DNA of 64,000 nucleotides, taken from IMG/VR virus record IMGVR_UViG_3300044797_000098, positions 1 through 64,000 of that record; one strand, given 5' to 3'. Both the position numbers and the translations under genes were made by a program. Below the pieces are notes generated by a model that was not told the origin of the DNA, ran no database searches, and saw only the letters and a list, made by a program, of their open reading frames with translations. This document shows, piece by piece, positions 6 through 47,419 of the stretch (position 1 is its first letter; every line of letters begins with the position of its first letter).

Positions 6-1190
6 TTACCCCGACATAAATGTTCGGGGCTTGTTGCTCGTCCTGCGTTTAGCAGGATGTTGTTTTTGAACGGCAACAATAGGCTCATTGACAAGAGCCC
101 AAGATAGAACGGTTGTTATACCGTTCAAAAGATTGATTGCGGATACTGCACGGTTTTTGATATTGATTGAGGCATTGACGTCTGCGTTTGTGGCGAAGCC
201 ACATTGCAGGCAAAGAAAATCGCTCTGCGATTTTCGATTACCCTTTTCACAATGTCCGCAGTTGCTACACGTTCTGCTTGTATTACGAGGATCAACGAGT
301 GCTACTGGAACACCTGCTATCTGCGCCTTGTAAAGTATGAACTGCATCAGTTGATTGAATGCCCACTTACCGTGCTTGTCTCTATCCTTTTTTCTAACCG
401 TTTTCTTGAAAGATTGCAAATCTTCGATTGCAATTCCAACATTGTGCCTTTTCGCTTCCGAGACAACCCGTTTGCTTATGATATGATTCGTGTTTCTCTT
501 GAATTTTCCTTCCTTGTTAGATATTCGTTTGAGATGACGTTTTGCGGACTTCGTTCCGCGAGACTGTAATCGTTTGCGTAAATTATGATATCGTTGTCTG
601 ACTGTTTCTACTTCGTTGCCTACGAACTTGACACCGTTGTCCAGCGTGGCTAAATTGACAATACCAGAATCCATACCGATAAAATCGGTTGGCAGATATT
701 GTTCTGCTTCTGGAACTTCGACTACGGCTTGTAGAAAAAAATTACCATTATTGAAAACTAATGTAGCACCGTTTCTAATCTTTCTATTGTATAAGTTTGC
801 ATATGTTCCGAAAGCGATTGGTATCTTTTTCAATCTTCTATTGATAGAAGATATGGAAATCATATCAAGGTTCTTGCCGAAGGCAAGAACCCTTGCATCA
901 AAATCGATTGATGAGTGTTTTTGGAAACGATGTTGAACGGTCTTGTCGTTTTTATATGTTGCTGAAACGCGTGCTATTGCACGGATTACAAATTGAGATG
1001 GTAGAGATGGAAACTGTTTGCGAACTTGATGATAGATTGCCTTTTGCAGTTTGAATTTAGAAAAACAACGATTAGCAAAAGCATATTCCGAGATCGAATT
1101 ACAAGTAGAATTGAACACATACATCGTGTTCAATAACGATTGTTTTTCGTTTGCAGAAACTATTAGTTTGACTGGAACGGTTAGCAACAT
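6..1190 (-). CDS. tnpB: TnpB RNA-guided nuclease (IS200/IS605-type), copy 1
   Basis: 394 aa; RuvC motifs GMDSG, IEDL, NADVNA; CxxC-CxxC zinc finger (CSNCG...CLQCG); right-end hairpin overlaps the 3' end of the gene. Confidence 0.93.
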   Translation of the reverse strand: MLLTVPVKLIVSANEKQSLLNTMYVFNSTCNSISEYAFANRCFSKFKLQKAIYHQVRKQFPSLPSQFVIRAIARVSATYKNDKTVQHRFQKHSSIDFDARVLAFGKNLDMISISSINRRLKKIPIAFGTYANLYNRKIRNGATLVFNNGNFFLQAVVEVPEAEQYLPTDFIGMDSGIVNLATLDNGVKFVGNEVETVRQRYHNLRKRLQSRGTKSAKRHLKRISNKEGKFKRNTNHIISKRVVSEAKRHNVGIAIEDLQSFKKTVRKKDRDKHGKWAFNQLMQFILYKAQIAGVPVALVDPRNTSRTCSNCGHCEKGNRKSQSDFLCLQCGFATNADVNASINIKNRAVSAINLLNGITTVLSWALVNEPIVAVQKQHPAKRRTSNKPRTFMSG

Positions 1191-1488: not shown

Positions 1489-1562
1489 TGGAACCGGCGA
1501 GCAACGATCTCGCAACCTATCGGTTAAAAGCCGATTGCTACTGCCAATTGAGCTACGGTTCC
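1489..1562 (-). tRNA. tRNA-Lys(UUU), atypical D and T arms, no encoded CCA
   Basis: Acceptor stem GGAACCG/CGGTTCC; anticodon stem ATCGG/CCGAT with loop CTTTTAA; T stem GCGAG/CTCGC. Confidence 0.85.
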
Positions 1563-2033
1563 ATTCCCCCGAATAAGGCATCGGGAGAACCGCCACATAA
1601 CAACACGTCATTGTGGAACGTGTTGATACGACCTAATACTTATCCCTTCCCAACCAATACACCAGATTATCTTCCCTATGCAAACTCGTCCGCCACTTAA
1701 TCAATCTTGCAATCTGACCTTTGCTCATACCATCTCGGATGTGAAGTCCGAGATACTTTGCAAGACGGATTAGATTAGGAAGACTGGCTTTTTTGAGCGT
1801 GCTGACTTTCACTTGCTTCTTGTTTTGCTTCTGCTTTCCTTGCACCAACACAAGCATAGCATTCACACATACAACTTGCCGGACGCACGGCATAACAAGT
1901 GCAAAAATCTGCACCACAACCATAGAATTTGCGCTCCTTATCCGTGAGTTCATTCCAATCGAAACGTTCAAACACGAAGTCTTGAACGTATGCGTCGTAT
2001 GCAATCTCCGCAAGGGATTTTAGTTGCGGTTCT

Positions 2034-2387
2034 TTACTCACTGACTTCTTCATTGGTTTCTTCCGTTGCTTCCACGACAGCACTATCATCCTTCACGTGA
2101 ATGCTCTTCAAAAACTTGGTTTTCTCTGCGCCTTCGAAGGGCATCGGACGACCCATAAGTTTCCATGCAAGGTTCCTCGCATGATAGTTCGGATGCGAAG
2201 ATCGCAGATGAGGATTTTTCACGTCCGGAAACCTATACGGATTTTCCATATCCAAAAACTGCTCAGGCGGACACCCCCCATTCTTCATTGCTTTAATGGC
2301 TTGTGCTCGCGAGTATCGTTTCGCTGACTTCTCTTTGCTACCTTTGCTATGATTACCCATTTGATCATCCTCCGGGCTTTTGCCCAT
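2034..2387 (-). CDS. Hypothetical protein
   Basis: 117 aa ORF, co-oriented with its neighbours, acidic C-terminus. Confidence 0.6.
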   Translation of the reverse strand: MGKSPEDDQMGNHSKGSKEKSAKRYSRAQAIKAMKNGGCPPEQFLDMENPYRFPDVKNPHLRSSHPNYHARNLAWKLMGRPMPFEGAEKTKFLKSIHVKDDSAVVEATEETNEEVSE

Positions 2388-2408
2388 TCTGAATTGACTT
2401 GATTTGAA

Positions 2409-2594
2409 TTACGACTTACGATTTGCTTTAATGATTAGCCTTACCCAATGAGTTGCTTGAACCGAACCCGCAACAATGAAAAACGCACCAAAACAATACC
2501 AAAACGGTGTTCGTGGCGGATACGCCATATCAAAAACACCAAGTGCGATTGTGCATAATGACAGGATCAAAAAGAACAACGGATTATTCATCAT
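2409..2594 (-). CDS. Small membrane protein
   Basis: Two hydrophobic segments in 61 aa. Confidence 0.55.
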   Translation of the reverse strand: MMNNPLFFLILSLCTIALGVFDMAYPPRTPFWYCFGAFFIVAGSVQATHWVRLIIKANRKS

Positions 2595-2599
2595 CTTGA

Positions 2600-3844
2600 C
2601 GCAGGGATACCCTTGGCTTCAGTCAAGGGATGAACTGCGCTCCGTGAATTATTTTTGTGTTGCATACGATTTTTCTCAACTTTCTACTACTAATGATATA
2701 TATACTTACGATGCGAAGAACTTTTTCTTTCTATATGCTTGCTCCAAACGGATTTTTAGACTATCTAAAAACTTGTTCGGATATTTTTACTCGTCATGTG
2801 GAATGGGCATTTTCTAATAAATCTACTAATAAGGTTCAAGCACACAAAGACTTGTATCAAGTTATTCGTTCCGAATATCCAAACATACCTTCCAACATTT
2901 TACAAGCAACACGAGATCAAGCATTGGAAGCAGTTAGAAGATTGAAGTTCAAAATCAAACCTAAAAAGAAACCACATTCAGCGGTTAGATACGATGCCAG
3001 AACAATTACTCTTCGCGGTAATCTTTTGACTTTTTCGTGGTCAGGCAAACGAATTAGAACACTAATCAATTTACCACAACATTTTCAACAATACAAAAAT
3101 TGGAAGATGCAATCAGGAACTATTGGTTATGACAAGGTCAAAAAGCAACTAAAAATTAGCCTTATTTTTGAGGCACCAGATACGATACCTATTCAAAACT
3201 CAACAAGAATAGTAGGCGTAGATCGCGGATTATATAATATCGTCTCGTTGTCAGACGGTCAATTGTATAATGCGCGAACGGTAAGAAAAAAGAAACGCGA
3301 GTTTCTTTATACGAAACGACAACTCCAAGCAAAAGGCACTCGATCTGCTAAACGAAAACTAAAAGCAAGATCAGGTCGAGAAAAGCGGTTCAGCACGGAT
3401 ACCAATCATGTAATTAGTAAATGGTTAGTAAATCAGTCATATGATACATTCGTTTTTGAAGACTTGAAAAACATTAGCAAGCAACGCAAAGGCAAGGTAT
3501 TGAATGGATGGCTTTCTAACTGGACATTTTTTCAATTAGAACAATTCGTTTTGTATAAAGCATCAACATTAGGCAAACAGGTTGTCAAGGTAGATGCAAG
3601 ATATACAAGTCAAAAATGCTCTAATTGTGGAATTGTTGAAAAATCTAATCGCAATAAATCAAGATATTGTTGCAGTAAATGCGGATATATAGAACACGCT
3701 GATATCAATGCTGCAAAAAATATCAAGATGAATTATACTCTCTCGTTAGCAGTAATGAATAACGAGCAGGCACCAGTCAATGTGCCATATGTGTCGATAG
3801 CAATATTAGATACAAGCCCTTGCCTTTAGGCAAGGGTACTTGAC
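2600..3844 (+). mobile_element. Non-autonomous IS200/IS605-like element carrying tnpB only
   Basis: Left hairpin CGCAGGGATACCCTTGG...CAAGGGATGAACTGCG at 2600-2639; right end CCCTTGCC-TTTA-GGCAAGGG-TACTTGAC ending at 3844. Confidence 0.75.
2711..3829 (+). CDS. tnpB: TnpB RNA-guided nuclease, copy 2 (start reassigned to MRRTFSF at 2711)
   Basis: RuvC motifs GVDRG, FEDL, HADINA; zinc finger CSNCG...CSKCG; N-terminus parallels copy 3 (MQRTISI). Confidence 0.93.
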   Translation: MRRTFSFYMLAPNGFLDYLKTCSDIFTRHVEWAFSNKSTNKVQAHKDLYQVIRSEYPNIPSNILQATRDQALEAVRRLKFKIKPKKKPHSAVRYDARTITLRGNLLTFSWSGKRIRTLINLPQHFQQYKNWKMQSGTIGYDKVKKQLKISLIFEAPDTIPIQNSTRIVGVDRGLYNIVSLSDGQLYNARTVRKKKREFLYTKRQLQAKGTRSAKRKLKARSGREKRFSTDTNHVISKWLVNQSYDTFVFEDLKNISKQRKGKVLNGWLSNWTFFQLEQFVLYKASTLGKQVVKVDARYTSQKCSNCGIVEKSNRNKSRYCCSKCGYIEHADINAAKNIKMNYTLSLAVMNNEQAPVNVPYVSIAILDTSPCL

Positions 3845-3846
3845 AA

Positions 3847-4980
3847 TCATCGAGCAAAAGGCTTGCACACGCGAGCCTTTATGTCCTGAAAACGAAGCCT
3901 AATGCTTTTGCGTTGAAGCGTTGCAACCGACAATGGCTTCTTATCATTCGAGCACAACAAGAGATCAACCTCTTCTTTGTCTTTATACCATTTCGTTGGA
4001 GGAGCAAGGAACTTATCCATTAGCGCATCGAACACTTCTCGGAAGGCGCCCGAAGCAAAAAACGCTACAATCAACAGAACCACTGCGATACATATAATCA
4101 TGGTCATAAGACCAACCATGATTACTGCAACTCTATGGTTCAAAACCATCATAACTATCAGTGTAAAAACGATTGGCATGAACGGAAGCAAGCATATCTT
4201 GCGAAGGACATACCAAGCAATCTCACCAGCAGAATACTCCTTAATGTGGTCTTTGTCTTCTGGCAACTTACGAATGAAGAATGTTCCCTCATCATATGTC
4301 AGTCTAACACTATCGCCAAGATCATATCCTGAAAATGGATTCAGGTATTCGAACTTGAAACCTCTCCAACCAAAAGCCAATGCACTAACACCGCACATAA
4401 CAAACCGAACAATGAAGCTCAACAAAACCATTGGAACTTGGATGGTATAAGCAAACAATCTACGCTTACGGAAGTCGCATTGATCAACTGCCTTATTGCT
4501 GAACATCCAATTCACATACGTCTTTTCCAACTCGGAAGGTTCCTTTGCGAAACATTCCTTTGGAATGTCAAGAGATAGAACTGGTGCTGCATTCGGTGGA
4601 GTATTCGTTTCCGACATTGATGATGGAATAGACCACTCATTGTTATCGACAACCGTAGTTTCGTATATACCGTTGTGGGTTGTTAGATATGTTGTCCTTG
4701 CTGACTTTCGATCTTGCGCAGAAACGAATGCAAAAACGTTATTCTTTCCGGGCTTCTTGAACGTGATGTATGTCATTAGTTCCGTAAGTGGAACAACATA
4801 TCGCGTTTCGTATAATGTATATTGCCCGCCAATATTTTCTGCTGCGACAACAATCACAACTTGCGGATCAACAACACCATTATCAGTGAGCGTTTTGATC
4901 AGGTCTTTATCTACGCACCAACTGATTGCAATGCTACCAGTTGATATATCTGCGTTAGGGTCAATATGAAGTTCAAACAT
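3847..4980 (-). CDS. Membrane protein of unknown function
   Basis: 377 aa with several hydrophobic helices in the C-terminal half. Confidence 0.75.
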   Translation of the reverse strand: MFELHIDPNADISTGSIAISWCVDKDLIKTLTDNGVVDPQVVIVVAAENIGGQYTLYETRYVVPLTELMTYITFKKPGKNNVFAFVSAQDRKSARTTYLTTHNGIYETTVVDNNEWSIPSSMSETNTPPNAAPVLSLDIPKECFAKEPSELEKTYVNWMFSNKAVDQCDFRKRRLFAYTIQVPMVLLSFIVRFVMCGVSALAFGWRGFKFEYLNPFSGYDLGDSVRLTYDEGTFFIRKLPEDKDHIKEYSAGEIAWYVLRKICLLPFMPIVFTLIVMMVLNHRVAVIMVGLMTMIICIAVVLLIVAFFASGAFREVFDALMDKFLAPPTKWYKDKEEVDLLLCSNDKKPLSVATLQRKSIRLRFQDIKARVCKPFAR

Positions 4981-12605: not shown

Positions 12606-14402
12606 CTATGCGACTTCCATAAGGGTTTCCTCATTGCGAGCACCCTCGGGGGTTTTGGCGTCGCCTGACCGCTCGCGCTCAAGTCCGCGGTCAAGGATAT
12701 TGTTTGATGCATTCTCATCTCGATCATGTTCAACACCACAACCTTGACAAAAATACTTCAACATACCTTTGATATCATCATTGTAATAATGACATATTCC
12801 GCATTCTTTTGAAGTGCCACGAGCATCAACTTCGATATATCCTTCTGTCTTTCCTCTGCTACGCAATGCGTTCTTACACGCATTACGAAACTCACTTGGT
12901 GCAGTCAGTTGCCTATTAGTGCTTCCAGCATTACCTCGTGCAAGGTTAGACAGATTGATGTCCTCGAAAACAATCGAACCGTATTGATCAGCAAGTTTTG
13001 CTGCCAACTTACGATACTCTTCGTTTCGATATCCAACTCCGCGATTGCGTTGCGAAGAAGCCCACTGCCATAGATGGTGATCATGATATCTCCATCCCGC
13101 AATACCAGTTCCTTTTGTTAGTGTTTTCGTTTCTTTATTCCACGAACCACTAATACCATAAATCTCTTCATCTCCCGCAAAACGATTGGTTGACCATTGT
13201 TTCACCAATCTTGCAAGACGACCTTGCGATCTCCACTTATCCAAGTGTTCACATTCTTTCGTGAGCCATTCGGGCAAGTTTTCTTTTCCAGTCATCCATT
13301 CAACTAATGATTTACGAACAGCATCGAACTCCTTATCTCGAATGCTTTCGATTTCGTTAGCCTTTGATAGTGCTGCAATGACACTTGATGGGACACGAAT
13401 ATCCCATTCCTTATTATCAGTTCCTTTACCATATCCAATGCGAACCGATCCGTCTTGCATATCGCGCCAACCAAGATCAATACCAACGCACGATTGATTG
13501 TTGTGTGCAATTGTATTTTGATTGTCATTGAACGTAATAGACACCGTCCAATGTTCTCGTGCTCCAATCTTATTGCAACATACCTGTACAACCTGAATAA
13601 CGCTTCCAGTAGGAATATCACGATGATATACCATTGGAAACTCTGCCCAGATAGGCTTACGATCATTGTCGGTTCCAATACGGAGACGGAACAATCGCAA
13701 GTCTTTCTTACCAACCTTACGCATCGTTCCATCTACCTTTACAATTGGAGCAGGCATAGGAATGATCCGAACCATCTTGCTTGATGCTTCAATGCCAATG
13801 ACCTTATCAATAGGTTCATTGGGTTGAAACTGCTGAATACCAACACGACCTTCACCAAGATATGAACGGAAACGAGGATCATTCGGTTCAACACCATCAT
13901 ACAATGGCATCTTACGAGTTTTCTGAAACGCATCCTCAATCAACATATACGTTCCATACCACGGAGCAATATCACTCTTGCGAACCTCTGCAATCTTTAG
14001 GTTCGCTTGCTGATCAATAGCAGTTCGTTTTGCTTTGATATCCTCATTGCTACGAAGCAATCTGCGTGCTTCAATAAGTTTCGAGTTGATTTCTTTGCGA
14101 GCCTTCTTTGCATCCCTCAGTTCTTGCTTCATCTCATCGGTTGCAACGCGAGTGCGAGCATCCGCATTAGCTCGTTTGTTCCTCTTGTCGAACGCAATAA
14201 CCTTATCATCCGCTTCCTTTACTGCGACTTCCAGTTCAGGAATATCACCTGCTTGTCGTTCAATGGTTCGGATTTCATTTCTCCTCCATCGTTCAATCTC
14301 AATAAGTTTGTTTTGGTAATTGTGTCCCTTTCTAATCTGCTCCATAACAAGATCATGGTTCAGTGTGGGTGCCAGAAGTCCTAACTTGAAGGTGCGTGTC
14401 AT
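12606..14402 (-). CDS. cas12m: Compact type V CRISPR effector, Cas12m-like (subtype V-M / V-U1)
   Basis: 598 aa next to the array; long coiled-coil REC insertion, WYGTY and GEGRVGIQ segments, RuvC-I GIDLGWR, KWRSQGRL, RuvC-II VFEDINL, TAPSEFR, zinc finger, RuvC-III DRDENA; collinear with the Cas12m proteins as I recall them. Confidence 0.8.
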   Translation of the reverse strand: MTRTFKLGLLAPTLNHDLVMEQIRKGHNYQNKLIEIERWRRNEIRTIERQAGDIPELEVAVKEADDKVIAFDKRNKRANADARTRVATDEMKQELRDAKKARKEINSKLIEARRLLRSNEDIKAKRTAIDQQANLKIAEVRKSDIAPWYGTYMLIEDAFQKTRKMPLYDGVEPNDPRFRSYLGEGRVGIQQFQPNEPIDKVIGIEASSKMVRIIPMPAPIVKVDGTMRKVGKKDLRLFRLRIGTDNDRKPIWAEFPMVYHRDIPTGSVIQVVQVCCNKIGAREHWTVSITFNDNQNTIAHNNQSCVGIDLGWRDMQDGSVRIGYGKGTDNKEWDIRVPSSVIAALSKANEIESIRDKEFDAVRKSLVEWMTGKENLPEWLTKECEHLDKWRSQGRLARLVKQWSTNRFAGDEEIYGISGSWNKETKTLTKGTGIAGWRYHDHHLWQWASSQRNRGVGYRNEEYRKLAAKLADQYGSIVFEDINLSNLARGNAGSTNRQLTAPSEFRNACKNALRSRGKTEGYIEVDARGTSKECGICHYYNDDIKGMLKYFCQGCGVEHDRDENASNNILDRGLERERSGDAKTPEGARNEETLMEVA

Positions 14403-24368: not shown

Positions 24369-26732
24369 TTACTGACTGATCTTTCTTTGGTATTCCATAT
24401 GGTCTTGTTCTTCCAACGATCGGAAGCGCATAATACCTTGCGTAATTGCTTTCCGTTTCTCTGTGTTAGTTCCACTAAGGATCTTCTTCAAGCTACGTGC
24501 AGGTAATCCTGTTATAGTTCTGCACGCATGACTATTGTCCTGATCATCAAGTCCACTTACCAGACTATCAAAATCAACGTCTCCTGTCATTAGGAAGTAT
24601 AGTGGAACTGCTCTCAGCGCGATCTTTGCTCTCTCTTTCTTGGCTTCTAGTGATAGCTCTTCTTTGTCTTTGGCAGGGTCTTTATCTCCGCCATTGCTAT
24701 CGGTATTACCATCAGTATTACCATCAGCGCTATCATCTTCGTCATCACTATCATCGCTATTACCACTGTCATCTAGTCGCCTAGAGTTCTTGCCGTTCTT
24801 CACGTCGGACTTGTTTACTTCGATACCCTTGATCTTAGATCCATTCAGTTCGATATCATCAAGTCCTTCAACTAAGTCATCAAGGTTTATAGGAAGAAGA
24901 TCCTCGAACAATGATTGAAGTCCAACAAGACTGGTTGATCTGCCGAATCCCTCTTCCAGTTTAGCGATGAGTTCGTCGGCATTCATTGCTTTGAATTCCG
25001 TTCCCTCATAGCATAGAACGTTGAACACCTTCAACATCTCATTCAGAATTGGCTTCGGGTTAGCACCGTTAGCCGTAGCCTGAGCGAGCGTATACAAGTG
25101 TTCAAGCGTGCGATTGGGATTGAAGTCGAATACATAGCATTCGTGCTTCATTCCAACCCATGGTGTTTGTCCTCGGAATATAAGCTGAAAATACAACTGA
25201 GCGGATGTCATATCCGACAGAATAAATACCGATCCCCATTCGGGGATCGATACTCCGTGCCCTAGCTTTCCACATGAAAGAGTAATCGTTCCAATGTGTT
25301 TCTTGTTGCGACCACTCTCTACGTCTGCAATTCTGCTCTTGACGAGTTGAACAGTATCAGGTCCTTCATCACCATTAGCACCTGCTGCAATGATGATATC
25401 ATAATGCTTATAAACTCGGTGTTTTTTAAGCATAGCTGCGGTAAGTTCCACGGCTTTCACATTGCGAGGTAGATACCATAGAGCATGCCGAAGATTGATT
25501 TCGGAATACCTAGAGTGCTTTGAGTATGGCATCTCCAACTCATGAGACATCATATCAAGAAAAGATTTGACGGACTTTTCATTGATGAATGAGGGAACTC
25601 CTTTTACCTTTTCTTCAATCGAAAAGAGTTTTGTGAATGTGAAGCCCTCGTCTTCGGTGAAGACGTCGGCATCCTCATACAACTCTGGAGAGAGAAGAAT
25701 GGTATGTAATGTCATAGGGCAGAGCCAATAGTATTGCCCATCTTTCTCAGCATTAGCTTGTCCGAGTCGAGCAAGCTCTTCTGCGCGAACATATTGCTCG
25801 TTTAGATATGACCAAGAGAACATTGCGTCTGGTTCGAAACGCTCTTCCAATAGAGCACGGAAGGGCGTTCCACTAAGATTGAGAATGTGCTTACAGTTAA
25901 GCTTAGCAAGCGCCTCTTTCGTGTTCGGAGTATCGAATGCGAGATGACACTCATCTTTGATGAGAAGATCGAATACCATGTTTGGGAAGTTCTTGAACTT
26001 AGGCTTCAATAATCCTTCTTTGGTTAGACGAGCAAGATCCTGCAATGATGCGAATATGATTGTTCGCTTGTTAGGATCGACAACGATCGGATCACTAACC
26101 TTACTTGCATCAATGAAGTTATCCTTGCCGAAGTCAAAATCGACATGATCCATTGCGTCAATCCAAGATTGTTTCGTATCAGTAGGACGACCAGTCAAAA
26201 TAAGAACGAGACCGAAATCCATTCTCATAATGAGCTGGTATGCAGCGTGCGTCTTACCAAAACGCATCTTACAATCCCAGAGAAACTCTCTCGTAAGATT
26301 TTCATCCTTAGACATGAAGGCAATGGTAATCGCTAGGCATTCGTCTTGTTCAGAACGAAGAAGAAACGATAGCAACTTACGATTACCATGATTGGCTGCA
26401 TTGAAGTAGAGAGTGATCTGTTGGACAAGGAAGTTATAGTCAGACACTAGTAGAGAGATTACTTCTCTGCCCCTACCACGATTGGCTCCGAACTTCTTTG
26501 CGAACGTAGAACATAGATGCTTACGGACACCTGCATCACCAAGATTAGTAGGGAAGAAGCAATGTTCAATATCACCTGGACAATGACGCTGATGTTCTCC
26601 GAGACGTTGATCGCGAGCACCAGCATTGTTATCAGACAATCCAATCTTGAAGTTGACACGATCAGTTGGAAGAAGATTGGTTATGTTGGGCCCAGTAAGA
26701 TACACACCGCGAGTATGAATAGGAGCAGCCAT
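24369..26732 (-). CDS. Restriction-type enzyme: N-terminal GIY-YIG/T5orf172-like nuclease plus SF2 helicase
   Basis: KIGLS...RL.EH N-terminal motif; Walker A CKMRFGKT, DECH, LSGTPF, and motif VI QLIFRGQTP. Confidence 0.8.
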   Translation of the reverse strand: MAAPIHTRGVYLTGPNITNLLPTDRVNFKIGLSDNNAGARDQRLGEHQRHCPGDIEHCFFPTNLGDAGVRKHLCSTFAKKFGANRGRGREVISLLVSDYNFLVQQITLYFNAANHGNRKLLSFLLRSEQDECLAITIAFMSKDENLTREFLWDCKMRFGKTHAAYQLIMRMDFGLVLILTGRPTDTKQSWIDAMDHVDFDFGKDNFIDASKVSDPIVVDPNKRTIIFASLQDLARLTKEGLLKPKFKNFPNMVFDLLIKDECHLAFDTPNTKEALAKLNCKHILNLSGTPFRALLEERFEPDAMFSWSYLNEQYVRAEELARLGQANAEKDGQYYWLCPMTLHTILLSPELYEDADVFTEDEGFTFTKLFSIEEKVKGVPSFINEKSVKSFLDMMSHELEMPYSKHSRYSEINLRHALWYLPRNVKAVELTAAMLKKHRVYKHYDIIIAAGANGDEGPDTVQLVKSRIADVESGRNKKHIGTITLSCGKLGHGVSIPEWGSVFILSDMTSAQLYFQLIFRGQTPWVGMKHECYVFDFNPNRTLEHLYTLAQATANGANPKPILNEMLKVFNVLCYEGTEFKAMNADELIAKLEEGFGRSTSLVGLQSLFEDLLPINLDDLVEGLDDIELNGSKIKGIEVNKSDVKNGKNSRRLDDSGNSDDSDDEDDSADGNTDGNTDSNGGDKDPAKDKEELSLEAKKERAKIALRAVPLYFLMTGDVDFDSLVSGLDDQDNSHACRTITGLPARSLKKILSGTNTEKRKAITQGIMRFRSLEEQDHMEYQRKISQ

Positions 26733-26750
26733 TGTGATTGTCTTTCGTTG

Positions 26751-28283
26751 TTATACGTCGTCTAGATTGATTACATTGGCAAGACGATCGAAGTCTCTCG
26801 ACGTCTTTGGTTGTCGTTGCTTCTTTTCTGCTTTGGCTTTGGGGGCTTTGGCAGGCTTGTTTCCCTTACTGCGAAACACGATATAATTTCGTGTAGTTTT
26901 TTCCACATGTTCAATCTCTTCCTTAGAGAGATCAAACATCGCATAGAGATCTTCGTTCGAATACGAACGAGTGAAGTCGAGATACGGAACGAATTTGAAT
27001 GTCTTGGATGAAGTATTCTTTACCTTCAGAAGTGAAACAAGATACTGTACGAGATAGGTATTGATGAATGCTTCCGCGTTCTTTACCTCTTCATTGGTAT
27101 CAAAAACACCAATCACGAGATACGTTTCACTAACGATGTTGCCAGGCTTCACAATGAATGTCTTGCCGGTCGAACCACGTTCCGCTCCATACGCCTTTGG
27201 AATACAGAGTTTCCACTTATCAATAGTATCTAAGTTTTTGGCGATATGTTTCTTGTTAACAAGCTTAGTCATCTCTCCACCGCCACTACCGCCTTTAACA
27301 TGGCATACATATGACGTTTCAAAATCGTCTGACCAATCCGAATAATTGCTTCGCAATCCATATGGATTGGAGAGTAGCATCTTAGATTCAAAAAACGTAT
27401 CGCACTTTGCTACCACCTTATCACGAATTGTTACTCCCACAACAAGAATAACCTCCTGTCCCTCAAGATTCATATCTTTACCATTGATCTTTACGACATG
27501 ATCGTTCTTGGAAGCTTCCCACATAAAATACATCACACCACCAGGAATAAGCACACCAGGAAACCAGTCTTCCGATTTTTCCGTAGAAACTATGTTCGTA
27601 AGCTTCTTACACGAGAGCATCATTTTCAAAAATGATGACGTGCTTTTTCCATTACCAGTCATCCACGGAGCAGGAATAACCATACTAAGATAGCTTGGAT
27701 TACACTCAGTTGCTTTTTGCACGAAGTCAGGATACAATGCACCAGCCGACGCACCTCCTCCACCAGCACCATCACTCAATTGGTAAGGCGGATTGCCAAC
27801 AATACAATCAAACTTCACATACGTTTCTTTCCCATTAGCTTCCTTCTTCACCATAACTTCTCCGTTCTTACCTAGTCTTGCTTTCAGGAAGTCTCGCGTC
27901 TGAACATTCCCTTTCAGCGTCAGAAACCCCCTCATATTATTCCACACTTTGCCTAGATAGTTCCTACGAACAATTAGCTCGCAAGCAGGCGTAGGAGCGA
28001 ATGAATAAATCATCTCATTGACAATCCAGTTTCGTCTCTCTTCGTAATCTGGAATAGCAACAATCAATCCCATCATCAATCGTCGAAACAACTCCAACTC
28101 AAACTCACCGTTCTTGCTAACAGGCACAAGCCACTTCAATCGAGGATTACTCCACACATCTTTAGGAAACGACTCACACATATTGAAAACCAACGGTGCG
28201 GGCGTCTTCACCATCTGATTCTCATTCTTCTTTTGAACGGGATTAGGAAGTCGGGCATGAAACGCAGCAGTCATTGTAGTCAA
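26751..28283 (-). CDS. N6-adenine DNA methyltransferase, Eco57I-like, with target-recognition domain
   Basis: FDCIVGNPPYQ catalytic motif IV; its SAM-binding motif I looks degenerate (WLVPVSKNGEF). Confidence 0.85.
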   Translation of the reverse strand: MTTMTAAFHARLPNPVQKKNENQMVKTPAPLVFNMCESFPKDVWSNPRLKWLVPVSKNGEFELELFRRLMMGLIVAIPDYEERRNWIVNEMIYSFAPTPACELIVRRNYLGKVWNNMRGFLTLKGNVQTRDFLKARLGKNGEVMVKKEANGKETYVKFDCIVGNPPYQLSDGAGGGGASAGALYPDFVQKATECNPSYLSMVIPAPWMTGNGKSTSSFLKMMLSCKKLTNIVSTEKSEDWFPGVLIPGGVMYFMWEASKNDHVVKINGKDMNLEGQEVILVVGVTIRDKVVAKCDTFFESKMLLSNPYGLRSNYSDWSDDFETSYVCHVKGGSGGGEMTKLVNKKHIAKNLDTIDKWKLCIPKAYGAERGSTGKTFIVKPGNIVSETYLVIGVFDTNEEVKNAEAFINTYLVQYLVSLLKVKNTSSKTFKFVPYLDFTRSYSNEDLYAMFDLSKEEIEHVEKTTRNYIVFRSKGNKPAKAPKAKAEKKQRQPKTSRDFDRLANVINLDDV

Positions 28284-36155: not shown

Positions 36156-37364
36156 ATGCAACGAACGATCTCTATCAAAATTGACGCACCAGCAGAGTTT
36201 TTAGATTACCTAAAAGCTTGCAACGAGCTATACAGCAGGTATGTTGAATGGTGTTTCGAGACCAAGAGCTACAATAAGAATAAATCTCATACCGAGCTAT
36301 ATGAAAAGTTTCGTCAGGAGTTTCCAAGTATCAATTCTGCCACCATTCAGTGTATTAGAGATAATGCACTTGAAAGCGTCAAGGCATTGAAATTCAAATT
36401 CAAGCCGAAAAAGAAGCCACATTCTCATATTCGTTTTGATAAGAGAACGATCGCTCTTCGAGGTGATCAACTATCGTTTGCATGGTCAGGTGATCGTATC
36501 AAACAGATCATAAAGATACCAGAGTTTTTCAAAAAACGATATGGATCTTGGAAGTTTCAGGCAGCAACAATAGGCTATAATAAGCATAAGAAGCAATTCG
36601 TTGCTAATCTGATTTTTCAATCAACTGCTCCGCAGGAGCTTCGCTCTTCTGCTCCGCAGGAGCTTCGCTCTTCTGCTCCGCAGGAGCTTCGCTCTTCTTC
36701 ACCTGAAAAGAAAGGTGATCGTGTAGTTGGTATCGATCGTGGACTGTATAACATAGTGTCTCTATCTGATGGTTTCAAGTATGCTTCCAATCAGGTCAGA
36801 AAAGTGAAACGAGAAGTCTTGTTTCTCAAAAAGCAACTTCAAACAAAAGGCACCCATAGTGCTAAACGCAAATTGAAAGCGTTGTCTTGCTATGAGAAGC
36901 GGTTTAGTTTGAATGTCAATCATATCATCAGTAAATTGTTAGTTTCGTTGCCATACGATATTTTTGTTCTCGAAGACTTGAAAGGTATTCGTAAGCAAAA
37001 ATCAAAAGGCAAACGACTAAACAAGTGGCTTGCTAACTGGTCATTTTGGCAATTAGAGGCTCTTCTGGGATATAAGGCAGAGATATTTTGCAAGCAAATT
37101 GTCAAAGTCGATGCTCGATATACCAGTCAAAAGTGCTGCAATTGCGGTCAAGTAGAAAAAGCCAATCGTGATGGCTCACATTACCACTGTGAGCGTTGTG
37201 GATTTAGGTGTCATTCGGATACGAATGCTGCTAAAAATATCCGCAATAACTATCTCATCTCTGCTGCTGAAAAACAGAAGGCAGAGCAGGCTATGTGTCA
37301 ATTAGCCGAATGCTTCGTATCGAAAGATACAGAAACAAGCCCCGTTGCTTTTAGCACGGGGTAA
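36156..37364 (+). CDS. tnpB: TnpB RNA-guided nuclease, copy 3, with a 3x APQELRSS insertion
   Basis: GIDRG, LEDL, HSDTNA RuvC motifs and zinc finger; right end CAAGCCCCGTTGCTTTTAGCACGGGGTAATTGA. Confidence 0.93.
   Translation: MQRTISIKIDAPAEFLDYLKACNELYSRYVEWCFETKSYNKNKSHTELYEKFRQEFPSINSATIQCIRDNALESVKALKFKFKPKKKPHSHIRFDKRTIALRGDQLSFAWSGDRIKQIIKIPEFFKKRYGSWKFQAATIGYNKHKKQFVANLIFQSTAPQELRSSAPQELRSSAPQELRSSSPEKKGDRVVGIDRGLYNIVSLSDGFKYASNQVRKVKREVLFLKKQLQTKGTHSAKRKLKALSCYEKRFSLNVNHIISKLLVSLPYDIFVLEDLKGIRKQKSKGKRLNKWLANWSFWQLEALLGYKAEIFCKQIVKVDARYTSQKCCNCGQVEKANRDGSHYHCERCGFRCHSDTNAAKNIRNNYLISAAEKQKAEQAMCQLAECFVSKDTETSPVAFSTG
36625..36696. repeat. Three tandem copies of the 24-nt hairpin element
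   Basis: (CTGCTCCGCAGGAGCTTCGCTCTT)x3. Confidence 0.95.
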
Positions 37365-43865: not shown

Positions 43866-43929
43866 GGTCTCATCAGGACGTGAATTATTACACGTCTACG
43901 CATATGCTTTTGACATATGCGTTTCGACC
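43866..43929 (-). ncRNA. Hammerhead ribozyme, type II (HHR-1)
   Basis: GGUC-GAAA-CGCAUAUG..CAUAUGCG-UA|GACGUG..CACGUC-CUGAUGA-GACC: complete core and three stems. Confidence 0.92.
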
Positions 43930-44467: not shown

Positions 44468-45542
44468 CTTTCCCTTACAGCGTATGCGTATACCTTCCAA
44501 CATCCTTCACATACTCACTAATCGTATACGCACGCACATTGCTTTCGCCTAACTCCTTTGTCCAGAAACTGATTACCTTATCCAAGGTATGACCACTGTT
44601 GTCATGAACGGTGCTATTCAGCACCGAATGTGCTCCGTTCTCCTCAACATCACACACAAGCGTATGATGGCATCCGTTGAACCGATCCCAATATATCGTC
44701 GCTACTGTTCGCATATGATATCCTCTTCTCCCACAATGTCGTATGACTCGATTATGTCGTTATCAGATAGAGCAAACGCAACGGCGTCTCTCCAATCTGC
44801 AACTACGGAATCCTCCTTCACTTTCGCATCTTGTAAGTTTAGGAGCCTAAGATGCAACAACATCATATCAGATGCTACATCCTGCGCTTTCTCCCACGCT
44901 TCCAACGTTCGCTTACAAGGGTTCTCCTTGTAGGTTTGCATGTATGCTTGCACGCGAAGCCTGCTTACTTCCAAGGCTTCAAGCGTCGTTTGACCCGTGT
45001 GTAGTGTGATAGCATTCATTGGCTCACCAGCCAATAGCAGAGAAACAACCAGCCACCCCATGCACACACATGAGGCGCGTAGTATGCAATCTTGGAATAC
45101 ATTGTGATCCTTTCGGGCAATGACTGAATTACCCAACAATATCCTACACATACGTATGCATAGGATATTAGTAGATACGTCAGTTCTTACTTACACCGTC
45201 TCCCAGCGCACATCCTTGACCCTCTGTTGTAGGCTGGTATCGTACATGTACGCCTCTTCGTCTTGGCTCCAATCGGTCAATTGTAGGAGACGTGGAAGAG
45301 CTTTGCGCGCTTGTGCGAGCTTGGGATACTGCTTATCAATACTCCTACCCGACATGACGTGTGTGATGGCATACCCCGGCTTATTGAACGCGCGGGTTAT
45401 GATGAGATGTCGCATCTTGGAGTACCGTGTGGTCTTTTCCCACACGAATTCCCCGCTGTCGGACTTCTCGTTAGTGATCACGGTAAAGGTGAGAGGGCGT
45501 CGTTTCATGTAGGTTTCTCCGTGTTGTGCATTCGTTGTGCAT

Positions 45543-45648
45543 GGTCTCATCAAGCGAGACTTACAGTCTCGCCCAATGCCTACCTTTCGGTAGTCATCAG
45601 TTAGGGCATAACCCTAATACATACAGGGACTTACCTGTATGTTTCGAC
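45543..45648 (-). ncRNA. Hammerhead ribozyme, type II, interrupted by a 47-nt insert (HHR-2)
   Basis: GGUC-GAAA-CAUACAGG..CCUGUAUG-UA|UUAGGG..CCCUAA-CUGAUGA-[insert]-UGAUGA-GACC. Confidence 0.7.
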
Positions 45649-45662
45649 CTTGTCTTGTAGTA

Positions 45663-46211
45663 TTAGAGCGTGACGGGGATGGTAATGTGCGACACCGCCT
45701 TCCGTGCGATTGACCGACCGTCAATCTTGAACCCTAGATCCTGTAGTTTTTTCACCTGCACGGCAGTATTGCTCGTTTCGAGAATACCTTGTAGGTCATT
45801 CACCGACACCTTGATACTCGAATCGAAGGCACCCATACGCGCCTTCAAGCTCGCAGAAAGACCGTCATACTCCGCCTTTTCCTTACGAAGTGCAATGATG
45901 TGGGTTTCGAGCACAACGTTGAGTGCTTGTCGCACCTTCTGCTCGGCTTCATTCTTCGCGCGTTGCTGTACCGTTGCAAGTGCGTTGATTGCCCGCACAC
46001 ACACCGTCCCGATGTCGTCGAATGTAAGCTTGTCGAACGATGGGTTAAGATTGCCACCTTTCCCCGCATCCCAGCACAAGGCATGCAATGCGCGGAAGTG
46101 TGCGGTAATCTCCGCGATCTGCTCACCGTTGAACTGTTTCGGCGCTTTCTTTTCTTCCTTTTCGGCAGAGGGAACGACAGTGGCAACCGTGGTGGTATTG
46201 TTCGTGGTCAT
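45663..46211 (-). CDS. Hypothetical helical protein (likely start MTTNNT)
   Basis: GGAG RBS before MTT; coiled-coil composition. Confidence 0.65.
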   Translation of the reverse strand: MTTNNTTTVATVVPSAEKEEKKAPKQFNGEQIAEITAHFRALHALCWDAGKGGNLNPSFDKLTFDDIGTVCVRAINALATVQQRAKNEAEQKVRQALNVVLETHIIALRKEKAEYDGLSASLKARMGAFDSSIKVSVNDLQGILETSNTAVQVKKLQDLGFKIDGRSIARKAVSHITIPVTL

Positions 46212-46633: not shown

Positions 46634-46695
46634 GATCTCCTCAGTGTGCGCCTAACGCACATACCGCCCTAACAGTGTTAGGAGCGGTTTCGATC
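46634..46695 (-). ncRNA. Hammerhead ribozyme, type II (HHR-3)
   Basis: GAUC-GAAA-CCGC..GCGG-UA|UGUGCG..CGCACA-CUGAGGA-GAUC. Confidence 0.88.
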
Positions 46696-46869
46696 TTGCC
46701 GACATTGTTAGCGTCTAGCCGGTATAGGCTACTTGTGATAGCCGTATGGTATAGTATTAGATTGTGGTATTATCTGCTTTCTTTGCACTCGCGCCTAGCG
46801 TTTCTTACTTCCCTATCTCGTCGCGCTTTGGCTTACAATATCACTTTCCGCTATCAGAGCCGATAATGT

Positions 46870-47328
46870 AGTCTAGTTGCTTCCCTTGGGAATACAACGA
46901 CAACATTGTGGCATAAGCGGGGACCATGTAAGACAATCGCCGAACCGTAGAATTAACCTTCTAGGTGCGATATGTCGTATCGTTAGAATAGAGACTGTCT
47001 ACTAGGTACACTTCCGATATTAGCGACTTTGCCTTACCTATCTTACCTACAGCGACTAGACCTTACAAGGTCATACCCCAAGGGGTATTGGTCGGCACTG
47101 TAGCGGGATAAGGCTTTCAGACTGCTTGCCAGTCTTCGCCCTGCTAAAACGGGTATTCCGTCGTATGCTCTACCTTAGGCGACATGTGGCAGACCCACAC
47201 CGTTCTAAGGTTTCTAACGCTAGTGTAGGAGCTACCTACTTGTTCCGTTTCCCCACTAGCTACTGCGGGGTGCTATCTAGAGAGAACGGCGGGCGGTTGA
47301 ATTACTTTAGGCCTCGCGGGGCTTTTTT
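46870..47328 (+). ncRNA. Candidate structured non-coding RNA
   Basis: Nested stems ending in a perfect Y junction (47031-47114), further hairpins, and a terminator-like end. Confidence 0.45.
47311..47328 (+). terminator. Putative intrinsic terminator
   Basis: GCCTCGCGGGGC followed by TTTTTT. Confidence 0.45.
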
Positions 47329-47419
47329 CTTCGCCCCTACCGTTCCGCTCTCGACAGATAGACTATATTGCAGACGTTGTGCCATGGCATATGGATCGGA
47401 TAAGTATATGATATTATTG

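What the first reader, a model, noticed from the sequence alone, without database searches (positions are those of the whole stretch)
45543..45652. Third hammerhead split by a 47-nt two-hairpin insert flanked by TGATGA direct repeats
Seen in sequence: stems I and III, GAAA and GUA are perfect, and the 5' end CAAGGUCGAAAC is identical to HHR-1. However, CUGAUGA is separated from stem II (GACC) by an insert holding CUACC-GAAA-GGUAG and GCGAGAC-UGUAA-GUCUCGC; TGATGA lies at both 45594-45599 and 45547-45552. Deleting one repeat unit gives a canonical ribozyme. Inference: this is either an inactivated copy or a variant with a structured domain looped out at the tolerant core position 7, possibly ligand- or protein-gated.
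Basis: partly seen in the sequence, partly recalled or inferred. Interest (0 to 1): 0.72.

Follow-up and report, generated by a model that had tools for sequence, protein, structure and literature searches.

The report
Hammerhead ribozyme copy split by insertion
A large peat-soil phage carries three self-cutting hammerhead RNAs between small genes, and the third has a 47-base, tightly folded insertion inside its catalytic core that occurs in no relative, so it is probably weakened or dead and only a bench assay can say.

Summary
On the minus strand, 45649-45543 is a type II hammerhead. It has GGUC, GAAA, a 9-bp stem III, the GUA cleavage triplet, a 6-7 bp stem I and CUGAUGA. A 47-nt insert (45593-45547) follows, made of two hairpins and ending in a second UGAUGA, and only then the stem II partner GACC.

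It is one of three hammerheads in the 406-kb phage record. The descriptor gave 0 hits in 150 shuffles, and a covariance model built only from HHR-2 homologues scores it 29.4 bits. Across relatives the family covaries strongly (17 of 21 pairs).

The insert is real: it is identical in three assemblies and retained in a metatranscriptome contig. It is single-copy and found in no relative, IMG/VR contig or GTDB genome. Relatives carry a covarying long hairpin, not a hammerhead, in front of the same downstream gene.

Predicted folding keeps the hammerhead junction intact, with the insert as two self-contained hairpins. A CAUUGG segment can pair with either UGAUG copy.

Activity cannot be settled by computation. 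My estimate is attenuated or dead 0.5, active insulated variant 0.33, gated 0.1. This is a new structural variant of a known kind, of moderate interest.

The parts
45543..45652 (-). HHR-3: the whole type II hammerhead-derived element including the insert. The predicted scissile bond lies between A45618 and U45617.
   Evidence: Sequence reading; the minimum-energy fold is the hammerhead junction plus two hairpins, -53 kcal/mol, z = -6.7; model R1 scores it 29.4 bits, E about 3e-6 to 8e-6.
45646..45649 (-). Stem II 3' strand GGUC (positions 11.4-11.1). CA at 45652-45651 can extend the helix across an A-A mismatch with UG at 45541-45540.
   Evidence: P(stem II) = 0.89 in a 331-nt context.
45643..45645 (-). 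Core G12 A13 A14, followed by A15.1 at 45642.
   Evidence: invariant in the family alignment.
45619..45642 (-). Stem III hairpin, 9 bp with loop UAAGUC. The stretch from the stem II strand through the cleavage triplet is 91% identical to the insert-less hammerhead of L013 and L019.
   Evidence: Relative to L012/L013 the stem differs by a compensating A/U pair insertion.
45618..45618 (-). A17, the cleavage-site nucleotide of the GUA triplet.
   Evidence: The RNA contig of run X24 covers 45411-45599 and ends 18 nt 3' of this site. This is weak evidence.
45601..45617 (-). Stem I hairpin, UUAGGG-UUAUG-CCCUAA.
45594..45600 (-). First core strand, C3 U4 G5 A6 U7 G8 A9 (CUGAUGA).
   Evidence: unpaired with probability 0.79-0.86 in the ensemble.
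45580..45593 (-). Insert hairpin a: 5 bp with a GAAA tetraloop.
   Evidence: pair probability 0.99.
45573..45578 (-). CAUUGG 'anti-core' segment. It pairs with the second UUGAUG in the minimum-energy fold, or with the first CUGAUG at a cost of +1.3 kcal/mol (about 13-15% of the ensemble).
45554..45572 (-). Insert hairpin b core: GCGAGAC-UGUAA-GUCUCGC.
   Evidence: the insert alone folds at -26.1 kcal/mol against -9.7 +/- 2.65 for shuffles.
45547..45552 (-). Second UGAUGA, preceded by U45553 where the core would have C3. It is a duplicate of the core strand and is paired in hairpin b except for its last A.
45543..45546 (-). Stem II 5' strand GACC (positions 10.1-10.4).
   Evidence: UGAUGAGACCA is identical to HHR-1.
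43866..43929 (-). HHR-1: canonical type II hammerhead (CUGAUGA core), with the cut between 43897 and 43896. It lies upstream of the 101-aa gene at 43825-43523.
   Evidence: 34.9 bits.
46634..46695 (-). HHR-2: canonical type II hammerhead (CUGAGGA core), with the cut between 46662 and 46661. It lies at the 3' side of a conserved block of about 650 nt that is non-coding.
45194..45508 (-). Downstream gene (105 aa, no family hit) whose 5' leader would start at the HHR-3 cut.
45666..46211 (-). Upstream gene (182 aa, no family hit). Its stop codon lies 10 nt before the element.

Best explanation
HHR-3 is a genuine, recently arisen paralogue within a cluster of three type II hammerhead ribozymes.

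What the cluster does. Together with covarying long hairpins, the hammerheads punctuate one minus-strand polycistronic transcript of small early-type genes in a 406-kb peat phage. The normal job of such elements is self-cleavage that cuts the long RNA into gene-sized pieces (inferred from Perreault et al. 2011, PMC3088659).

What happened to this copy. It acquired a lineage-specific 47-nt insertion at the shared UGAUGA. The insertion brought, or created, a second UGAUGA and two very stable hairpins. The cause was most likely an illegitimate, microhomology-type recombination.

What the insertion changes. All conserved nucleotides and all three stems survive, and the predicted secondary structure still closes the hammerhead junction. 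However, the three-way core becomes a five-way junction with linkers of 0-1 nt, and the catalytic core is interrupted at G8/A9/G10.1, or equivalently at position 7.

Most likely consequence. The copy is strongly attenuated or catalytically dead. The phage tolerates this because cleavage at this junction is dispensable: relatives have no hammerhead there.

Status of each step. Shown: the anatomy, homology to the family, uniqueness of the insert, its presence in RNA, and the predicted folds. Inferred: the cleavage function of the cluster, the origin of the insert, and the loss or reduction of activity.
For: Anatomy and non-chance occurrence.

Homology to sister hammerheads:
- A model built only from HHR-2 homologues finds HHR-1 (34.9 bits), HHR-3 (29.4 bits) and relatives' copies.
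- Family covariation: 96.5% of cells paired, 17 of 21 pairs with compensatory changes, 0 of 500 shuffles reach the score.
- The stretch from the stem II strand through stem III is 91% identical to the insert-less hammerhead of L013 and L019.

The insert is unique:
- It is single-copy in the 406-kb genome and absent from all fetched relatives.
- IMG/VR gave 0 hits for insert or architecture patterns, and GTDB genomes gave 3 chance hits.
- Homologues of the downstream gene carry a hairpin motif or other sequence instead, never a hammerhead.
- No hammerhead follows homologues of the upstream gene.

The direct repeat UGAUGA flanks the insert.

Published core insertions of 1-2 nt (A6a, 2a/2b) and spacing changes cut activity by orders of magnitude (PMC3088659).

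I found no convincing loop I / 3'-tail pseudoknot in HHR-3 by inspection, whereas HHR-1 and L158 have 4-5 bp candidates.
Against: - Every conserved core nucleotide, the GUA triplet and all stems are still perfect. No decay is visible.
- The insert folds on its own (z = -6.2) and leaves the hammerhead junction as the minimum-energy fold, with the first core about 84% unpaired.
- The duplication allows registers in which C3-A6 stay attached to stem I and (G8)A9 stay attached to stem II.
- A distant relative (L158) has one extra U exactly between A9 and G10.1. The CChMVd hammerhead tolerates an extra nucleotide at that site (PMC3705267).
- The element is identical in three assemblies from different samples, and the insert is retained in RNA. 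The lineage is therefore viable.
- The only RNA contig over it ends 18 nt downstream of the predicted cut.
- Activity was not and cannot be measured here.
Confidence: 0.5

Rival explanations
1. Active, structurally insulated variant. The two hairpins loop out of the core as an inert domain. The core is assembled from the first-copy C3-A6 (or C3-G8) and the second-copy (G8)A9, which stays contiguous with stem II. The ribozyme still cleaves constitutively at 45618/45617, perhaps more slowly. The 3' product carries a 5' leader of three hairpins that may stabilise the downstream mRNA.
For: - Core and stems are intact.
- The minimum-energy fold and the 331-nt-context fold keep stems I, II and III, with the first core free.
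- The insert alone has z = -6.2.
- A9/G10.1 is a known tolerant site: CChMVd A10 (PMC3705267), and the L158 hammerhead has an extra U there.
- Position 7 varies freely (U, G, A, C) in this family.
- The RNA contig retains the insert and ends just 3' of the cut.
Against: - In my literature searches I found no natural hammerhead described with a large domain inside the core.
- Small core insertions are strongly deleterious (PMC3088659).
- Linkers of 0-1 nt around two extra helices strain the junction.
- The insert is not conserved anywhere.
- No tertiary stabiliser was identified.
Confidence: 0.33
2. Gated ribozyme. CAUUGG in the insert acts as an anti-core that can pair with the real core (OFF) or with the duplicated decoy UUGAUG (ON). 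A protein, a ligand or transcription kinetics sets the balance and so times separation of the downstream gene from the upstream one.
For: - There are two near-isoenergetic states, 1.3 kcal/mol apart, at about 84% and 13-15%.
- Co-transcriptional prefixes of 93-118 nt have the core sequestered. The fold switches only when the second UGAUG and GACC appear.
- A GAAA tetraloop and a 14-bp helix are plausible protein or tertiary contact sites.
Against: - A 6-nt complementarity inside 47 nt is expected by chance about one time in ten (my estimate).
- A canonical type II hammerhead cannot cut before GACC is made anyway, so early sequestration adds little.
- The insert has no homologues, so there is no covariation or conservation to support a binding site.
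- No aptamer-like family matched.
Confidence: 0.1
3. The insert is itself the functional unit, or a mobile unit. One option is a remnant or replacement of the long-hairpin processing motif that sits upstream of this gene in relatives. The other is a miniature IS200/IS605-type hairpin element that inserted 3' of a TTGAT-like target. In either case the hammerhead is collateral damage.
For: - Relatives have a covarying hairpin of about 20 bp in this slot.
- GGCGAGACUGUAAGUC in the insert resembles the 5' flank of that motif, GGCGAGUCUGCUAAUGUC (41-43 of 1000 shuffles score as well).
- Four TnpB-like genes lie in the same 48 kb.
- The left flank CTGAT and the insert end TTGAT are similar.
Against: - The similarity to the motif is marginal and not corrected for multiple tests.
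- The two insert hairpins are unlike each other, whereas LE and RE hairpins should match.
- The insert is single-copy.
- The TnpB copies are old and divergent, with no shared ends.
- 41-47 nt is far shorter than the miniature elements of this kind that I know of.
Confidence: 0.06
4. Not a hammerhead at all: a chance juxtaposition of motifs, or an assembly artefact.
For: Rfam finds no hammerhead family here at any threshold.
Against: - Rfam also misses the canonical HHR-1 and HHR-2, so its silence says nothing.
- 0 of 150 shuffles match the descriptor.
- The independent model gives E about 3e-6.
- The sequence is identical in three assemblies and one RNA contig.
Confidence: 0.01

Closest known systems
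Type II hammerhead ribozymes clustered in phage and prophage polycistronic transcripts (Perreault et al. 2011, PMC3088659; Rfam RF02276)
   Same: - Same circular permutation: stems I and III closed, stem II open.
- Same core (CUGANGA, GAAA, A15.1-U16.1, UH) and a short stem II.
- Three copies within about 2.8 kb flank small genes of unknown function on one strand of a phage, as in the tested triple arrangements of A. tumefaciens, A. caulinodans and C. scindens.
   Different: - 47 structured nucleotides plus a duplicated UGAUGA lie between the core and stem II.
- I found no loop I / 3'-tail pseudoknot.
- The Rfam model does not score it, nor its canonical sisters.
CChMVd (+) hammerhead with an extra A10 between A9 and G10.1 (De la Pena & Flores 2001, as summarised in PMC3705267)
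   Same: The insertion lies at the same junction of core and stem II. It shows that this site tolerates an extra residue. The L158 relative here has one extra U at that site.
   Different: One nucleotide against 47 nt with two helices; a type III viroid ribozyme; its activity was measured.
Saltern hammerhead variants with 2-nt core insertions (HHmeta, HHphage) and the A6a and U13a variants (PMC3088659)
   Same: Natural hammerheads with insertions inside the conserved core, some of them from phage.
   Different: Their insertions are 1-2 nt and lie near C3, A6 or A13. Their activity was shown to be low or dependent on high Mg2+. They have no duplication and no structured domain.
Discontinuous hammerhead of mammalian Clec2 3' UTRs (reviewed in PMC6155905)
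   Same: A hammerhead whose two halves are separated by a long intervening sequence.
   Different: There the intervening sequence (150-1500 nt) lies in the loop of helix I, outside the core. Here it lies within the core strand.
Engineered allosteric hammerheads (aptazymes) and riboswitch expression platforms (from my own knowledge)
   Same: A three-element logic (core, anti-core, decoy) that could toggle an active and an inactive fold.
   Different: Aptazymes attach the sensor to stem II or III, not inside the core. Here no ligand pocket, conservation or covariation is known.

Membership tests
Type II hammerhead ribozyme | Conserved core nucleotides C3 U4 G5 A6 N7 G8 A9, G12 A13 A14, the A15.1-U16.1 pair and H17 (not G) at the cleavage site. 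| tested here: met
   CUGAUGA at 45600-45594; GAAA at 45645-45642; U45619 and A45618 (descriptor hits).
Type II hammerhead ribozyme | Three helices around the core in the type II permutation: stem III and stem I are hairpins, stem II is formed by the 5' and 3' ends. | tested here: met
   The minimum-energy and centroid folds show stem III (9 bp), stem I (6-7 bp) and stem II (GGUC/GACC) closing the junction. P(stem II) = 0.89 in longer context.
Type II hammerhead ribozyme | Core strand contiguous with stem II (A9 directly followed by 10.1), giving a three-way junction. | tested here: not met
   47 nt (45593-45547) lie between A9 and G10.1, making a five-way junction.
Type II hammerhead ribozyme | Scores against the curated Rfam model RF02276 at the gathering threshold. 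| tested here: not met
   No hit at any threshold. The canonical HHR-1 and HHR-2 also fail, so this test does not discriminate here.
Type II hammerhead ribozyme | Homology to bona fide family members under a sequence-plus-structure model. | tested here: met
   Model R1, built from three HHR-2 homologues only, scores HHR-3 at 29.4 bits, E 3.3e-6 to 7.7e-6. The alignment stops at the insert and uses UACC as a poor stem II.
Type II hammerhead ribozyme | Stems supported by covariation. | tested here: met
   For the family: 17 of 21 pairs have compensatory changes, covariation score 0.852 against 0.201 for shuffles, slid controls at most 0.2 (the alignment is fitted to the model). HHR-3 contributes different stem I and stem III sequences. 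There is no variation within HHR-3 itself, which is identical in 3 assemblies.
Type II hammerhead ribozyme | Pseudoknot between loop I and the 3' tail just after stem II. Most type II examples have it; it is not obligatory. | tested here: not met
   By inspection, only 3-4 bp options exist, and they require opening stem I or stem II. HHR-1 (UAAUU/AGUUG) and L158 (UAAU/AUUG) have candidates.
Type II hammerhead ribozyme | Self-cleavage by internal transesterification at H17. | not testable with these tools
   The only evidence is circumstantial: RNA contig 45411-45599 ends 18 nt 3' of the site. The run is held only as assembled contigs, so read ends could not be counted.
Type II hammerhead ribozyme | Typical context: several copies flanking small genes in phage transcripts. 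| tested here: met
   Three copies at 46695-43866, all on the minus strand and each in an intergenic gap. The record is a virus record. Relatives show the same layout.
Natural allosteric or gated ribozyme | A conserved sensor domain with covariation or a recognisable aptamer. | tested here: not met
   The insert has no homologue in any collection searched and no Rfam match.
Natural allosteric or gated ribozyme | Alternative mutually exclusive folds that include or exclude the catalytic core. | tested here: inconclusive
   Two states lie 1.3 kcal/mol apart, and there is a co-transcriptional order of events. The complementarity is short enough to be chance.
Miniature IS200/IS605-type hairpin element | Multiple copies, matching left-end and right-end hairpins, and insertion 3' of a fixed target. 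| tested here: not met
   Single copy; the hairpins are unlike each other; the TnpB genes nearby share no ends.

The most novel reading that the evidence does not exclude
HHR-3 would be the first natural hammerhead with a folded domain inside its catalytic core. The duplicated UGAUGA would act as a decoy that frees the real core from an anti-core (CAUUGG). The result would be a built-in conformational gate, kinetic or protein- or ligand-controlled, that times the separation of two phage genes on one transcript.
Probability: 0.1. Interest if true: 0.8.

Novelty: new variant of a known kind. Interest (0 to 1): 0.42.

Why it matters
Hammerheads are the best-studied small ribozymes, and their core is regarded as nearly intolerant of insertions.

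If this natural copy still cleaves with 47 structured nucleotides in the core, it would:
- redefine what descriptor and covariance-model searches should allow;
- give a natural scaffold for core-inserted sensors;
- show how phages can tune RNA processing.

If it is dead, it is a clean snapshot of how a ribozyme is lost while the phage falls back on other intergenic processing elements.

Either way, the locus shows that curated Rfam models miss a whole covarying clade of type II hammerheads in large environmental phages.

Tried and rejected
- **Rfam at all thresholds, and the RF02276-only search**. No hammerhead hit, even for the canonical copies, so Rfam was rejected as a membership test here.
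- **14-mer GGTCGAAACATACA in IMG/VR**. It returned 118 or more loci and none is a hammerhead; all are chance.
- **Architecture pattern** (GTCGAAAC, gap, CTGATGA, gap, TGATGAGAC). IMG/VR gave 0 hits. GTDB genomes gave 3 hits, all without stems I and III.
- **Exact insert and stem I strings in IMG/VR**. 0 hits.
- **megablast of the 5-kb neighbourhood against GenBank phages**. No match.
- **Search for other copies of the insert** in the 406-kb genome and in the relatives' loci. None found.
- **Second overlapping hammerhead using the second UGAUGA.** No GAAA or stem arrangement fits, and it has U at the C3 position. Rejected by inspection.
- **Hairpin a as a closed stem II.** It is not followed by GAAA, so this was rejected.
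- **Loop I pseudoknot with the tail or the insert.** Only 3-4 bp options exist, and they need stems to open. Not convincing.
- **Insert as a remnant of the hairpin motif**. Marginal; 41-43 of 1000 shuffles score as well.
- **TnpB element ends as the source of the insert**. No shared ends.
- **Insert as a terminator or promoter**. No consensus site in it.
- **Three-dimensional modelling of the two cleavage fragments**. The tool refuses RNA-only jobs.
- **Read-level test of cleavage and of insert polymorphism**. The runs are held only as assembled contigs. No ends table and no insert-less joint were reported, so the test was uninformative apart from showing that the insert is present in RNA.

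Full report
**Observation**

Read on the minus strand, the finding's interval contains the following, in order:
- CAAGGUC, then GAAA.
- A 9-bp stem III hairpin (45642-45619).
- The GUA triplet (45620-45618).
- A stem I hairpin (45617-45601).
- CUGAUGA (45600-45594).
- Hairpin a, CUACC-GAAA-GGUAG (45593-45580).
- G, then CAUUGG (45578-45573).
- Hairpin b, GCGAGAC-UGUAA-GUCUCGC (45572-45554).
- U, a second UGAUGA (45552-45547), and GACC (45546-45543).

Removing one 47-nt repeat unit gives a canonical type II hammerhead. The predicted scissile bond lies between A45618 and U45617.

**Not chance, and not an artefact**

- A descriptor search of the whole 406,470-bp record finds only three convincing hammerheads: HHR-1 at 43929-43866, HHR-2 at 46695-46634 and HHR-3.
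- A reduced descriptor that does not even ask for stem II gave 0 hits in 150 dinucleotide-preserving shuffles of the window, against 3 real hits.
- The 11-mer UGAUGAGACCA after the insert is identical to HHR-1.
- The element is base-for-base identical in the source assembly, in a Logan assembly of another run, and in a contig from a different JGI sample.
- A metatranscriptome contig (run X24) covers 45411-45599 without a difference. The insert is therefore present in RNA and is not spliced out.

**Family membership**

Rfam reports no hammerhead at any threshold, even for a 100-nt stretch around the canonical HHR-1 and in a dedicated RF02276 search. I therefore built a covariance model from three HHR-2 homologues only (window, L002, L008).
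- The model independently recovers HHR-1 (34.9 bits), relatives' hammerheads (22.9-36.1 bits) and HHR-3 (29.4 bits, E about 3e-6).
- For HHR-3 the alignment runs through CUGAUGA and then has to use UACC of hairpin a as a poor stem II.
- On the model-fitted alignment of 11 distinct sequences, 96.5% of cells are paired, 17 of 21 pairs show compensatory changes, and the covariation score is 0.852. Shuffles give 0.201 (0 of 500 reach the observed score) and slid controls give at most 0.2.
- Position 7 is U, G, A or C in different copies, and H17 is A or C. Both fit the hammerhead consensus.

This phage group therefore carries a real, evolving clade of type II hammerheads that the curated model misses.

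**Context**

- The window is the first 64 kb of a virus record with an estimated completeness of 95%.
- Positions 1-48,000 have 41-48% GC except one 2-kb bin at 39% (2001-4000); beyond about 48,000 GC is 25-38%.
- That GC-richer segment holds four TnpB-like genes, a helicase and a DNA methyltransferase.
- The small genes next to the hammerheads have no PHROG match.
- Every gene in the 47-43.5 kb block lies on the minus strand.
- Each intergenic gap holds either a hammerhead or a covarying long hairpin with conserved flanks, CUGCUAAU...AUUGUUGG. Eleven of its 22 pairs show compensatory changes.
- This matches the published picture of clustered hammerheads that flank small genes in phage polycistronic RNAs and cleave them in vitro and in E. 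coli (PMC3088659).

**Is the insert shared?**

It is not.
- Homologues of the downstream 105-aa gene (6 clusters among 5.8 billion proteins) are preceded by the hairpin motif (L008, L152), by another hairpin (L151), by unrelated sequence (L011), or directly by another ORF (L012 type). None is preceded by a hammerhead.
- Homologues of the upstream 182-aa gene are never followed by a hammerhead.
- The stretch of HHR-3 from the stem II strand through stem III is 91% identical to an insert-less hammerhead that occupies the HHR-1 position in relatives (L013, L019). HHR-3 therefore looks like a young paralogue.
- The insert is single-copy in the genome and absent from the relatives' loci.
- Exact-string and architecture patterns found nothing in IMG/VR and only three chance matches in 185,579 GTDB genomes.
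None carries an insert-bearing hammerhead.

**Predicted folding**

- The 131-nt element folds at -53.0 kcal/mol (z = -6.7). The minimum-energy structure is the hammerhead junction with the insert as two separate hairpins. Hairpin b extends to 14 bp because CAUUGG pairs with the second UUGAUG.
- The same fold is the minimum-energy structure in a 331-nt context, with P(stem II) = 0.89.
- The insert alone folds at -26.1 kcal/mol against -9.7 +/- 2.65 for shuffles (z = -6.2, 0 of 500).
- An alternative fold, in which CAUUGG pairs with the first CUGAUG and sequesters the core, costs only 1.3 kcal/mol more and holds about 13-15% of the ensemble.
- That alternative is the minimum-energy fold of nascent RNAs of 93-118 nt. 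The fold switches once the second UGAUG and GACC are transcribed.

**What this means mechanistically (inference)**

Because of the duplication, the insertion point is ambiguous. The core could be built in several ways:
- entirely from the first copy, with the insert between A9 and G10.1;
- from first-copy C3-G8 plus the second-copy A9, which is unpaired in the minimum-energy fold and directly 5' of G10.1;
- from first-copy C3-A6(U7) plus second-copy G8-A9, with the insert looped out at position 7. This needs one C-G pair of hairpin b to open.

The second copy cannot serve alone: it has U where C3 should be, and two hairpins separate it from stem I.

In favour of tolerance:
- A9/G10.1 accepts one extra nucleotide in CChMVd (PMC3705267).
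- A distant relative here (L158, from a 298-kb contig) has one extra U at exactly that site in its HHR-1-type hammerhead.

Against tolerance:
- Published natural core insertions of 1-2 nt, and small spacing changes, lower activity by orders of magnitude (PMC3088659).
- The two extra helices have linkers of only 0-1 nt.
- I found no tertiary stabiliser.
- In my literature searches I found no hammerhead described with a large domain inside the core.

**Weighing**

The only in vivo hint is that the sole RNA contig over the element ends 18 nt 3' of the predicted cut, and no RNA contig covers the upstream gene. At a word depth near 3 this is not evidence.

My estimates are:
- 0.5: the copy is strongly attenuated or dead and is tolerated because cleavage at this junction is dispensable.
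- 0.33: it is an active, insulated variant.
- 0.1: it is gated.
- The remainder: other readings.

The origin of the insert is unresolved. A microhomology-mediated event at UGAUGA is the simplest explanation. A link to the hairpin motif is marginal, and a link to IS200/IS605 elements is not supported.

**Novelty and verdict**

- The cluster as such is a known kind: type II hammerheads in phage operons.
- HHR-3 is a new structural variant of that kind, of unknown activity.
- No ligand or protein gating is supported.
- The decisive test is a simple cleavage assay of native RNA against insert-deleted RNA, plus 5'-end counting in raw metatranscriptome reads.

While working on this I noticed a conserved, covarying non-coding block of about 650 nt with sigma-54-type promoter elements directly upstream of HHR-2. 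It may be the more interesting object in this neighbourhood.

Noticed in passing
window 46700-47360, minus strand (also L002:2943-3603, L160:3837-4497, L159:1500-2170): A non-coding block of about 650 nt lies directly 5' of HHR-2. Most of it is highly conserved at the nucleotide level across four relatives, although neighbouring proteins are only 58-73% identical. RNAalifold predicts 186 pairs, 29 with compensatory changes. No Rfam family matches. It has the highest RNA word depth of the laid stretch. HHR-2 would cut at its 3' side, so it may be an undescribed large structured phage RNA released by a hammerhead.
   Followed up: partly
window 47384-47369 and 47771-47756, minus strand: Two sigma-54-type -24/-12 elements (TGGCAC-N6-TGCA and TGGCAT-N6-TGCA). 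Their GG and GC dinucleotides are conserved in the relatives. The first lies just upstream of the conserved block. The window has 3 matches against 0.55 expected. This suggests RpoN-dependent transcription of the ncRNA and the hammerhead gene block.
   Followed up: partly
window 46301-46259 and 45175-45133, minus strand; L002 4657, 5620, 6557; L008 3421, 3848, 4255; L149; L012; L158 6646: A recurrent intergenic long hairpin with conserved flanks, (U)CUGCUAAU-stem-AUUGUUGG-(R)YAAUUCAG, lies 15-40 nt upstream of start codons. Eleven of 22 pairs covary. It occupies the slot upstream of the 105-aa gene that HHR-3 holds in this phage. It looks like an RNase III-type or other protein-recognised processing site.
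   Followed up: partly
window 43866-43929 and 46634-46695; whole record: The Rfam Hammerhead_II model (RF02276) and all other Rfam hammerhead models fail to report the two canonical type II hammerheads, even on a 100-nt stretch at E up to 10. A 3-sequence home-made model finds the whole clade.
   Followed up: yes
L158:6124-6185: A distant relative's HHR-1-type hammerhead reads CUGACGA-U-GACU, with one extra U between A9 and G10.1. This is the same site as the 47-nt insert of HHR-3.
   Followed up: partly
window about 48000: Sharp composition break: 41-48% GC over most of 1-48000 (one 2-kb bin at 39%), then 25-38% beyond. The whole record is 35.6% GC. The related contig G001 shares sequence up to about 48233, and its end falls inside the hammerhead block. 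The GC-richer 48 kb may be an acquired island or a separate element.
   Followed up: no
window 6-1190 (-), 2657-3829 (+), 12606-14402 (-, C-terminal part), 36156-37364 (+): Four divergent TnpB/OrfB_IS605-like genes (phrog_506, phrog_12300) lie in the GC-richer segment. A relative's contig also has one near its hammerhead block, with OrfB_IS605 and Cas12f1-like_TNB domains.
   Followed up: partly
window 45540-45521, minus strand: Direct repeat AUGCACAAC-GA-AUGCACAAC in the tail between GACC of HHR-3 and the ribosome-binding site of the downstream gene. Its purpose is unknown.
   Followed up: no
window 1489-1562, minus strand: One tRNA gene (53.7 bits), the only Rfam hit above threshold in the window.
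   Followed up: no
window 24369-28283, minus strand; L008 7413-10232: A DNA methyltransferase and a ResIII-type helicase follow the hammerhead gene block in the same order in the window and in relatives. The block therefore looks like a conserved early or anti-defence-type operon.
   Followed up: no
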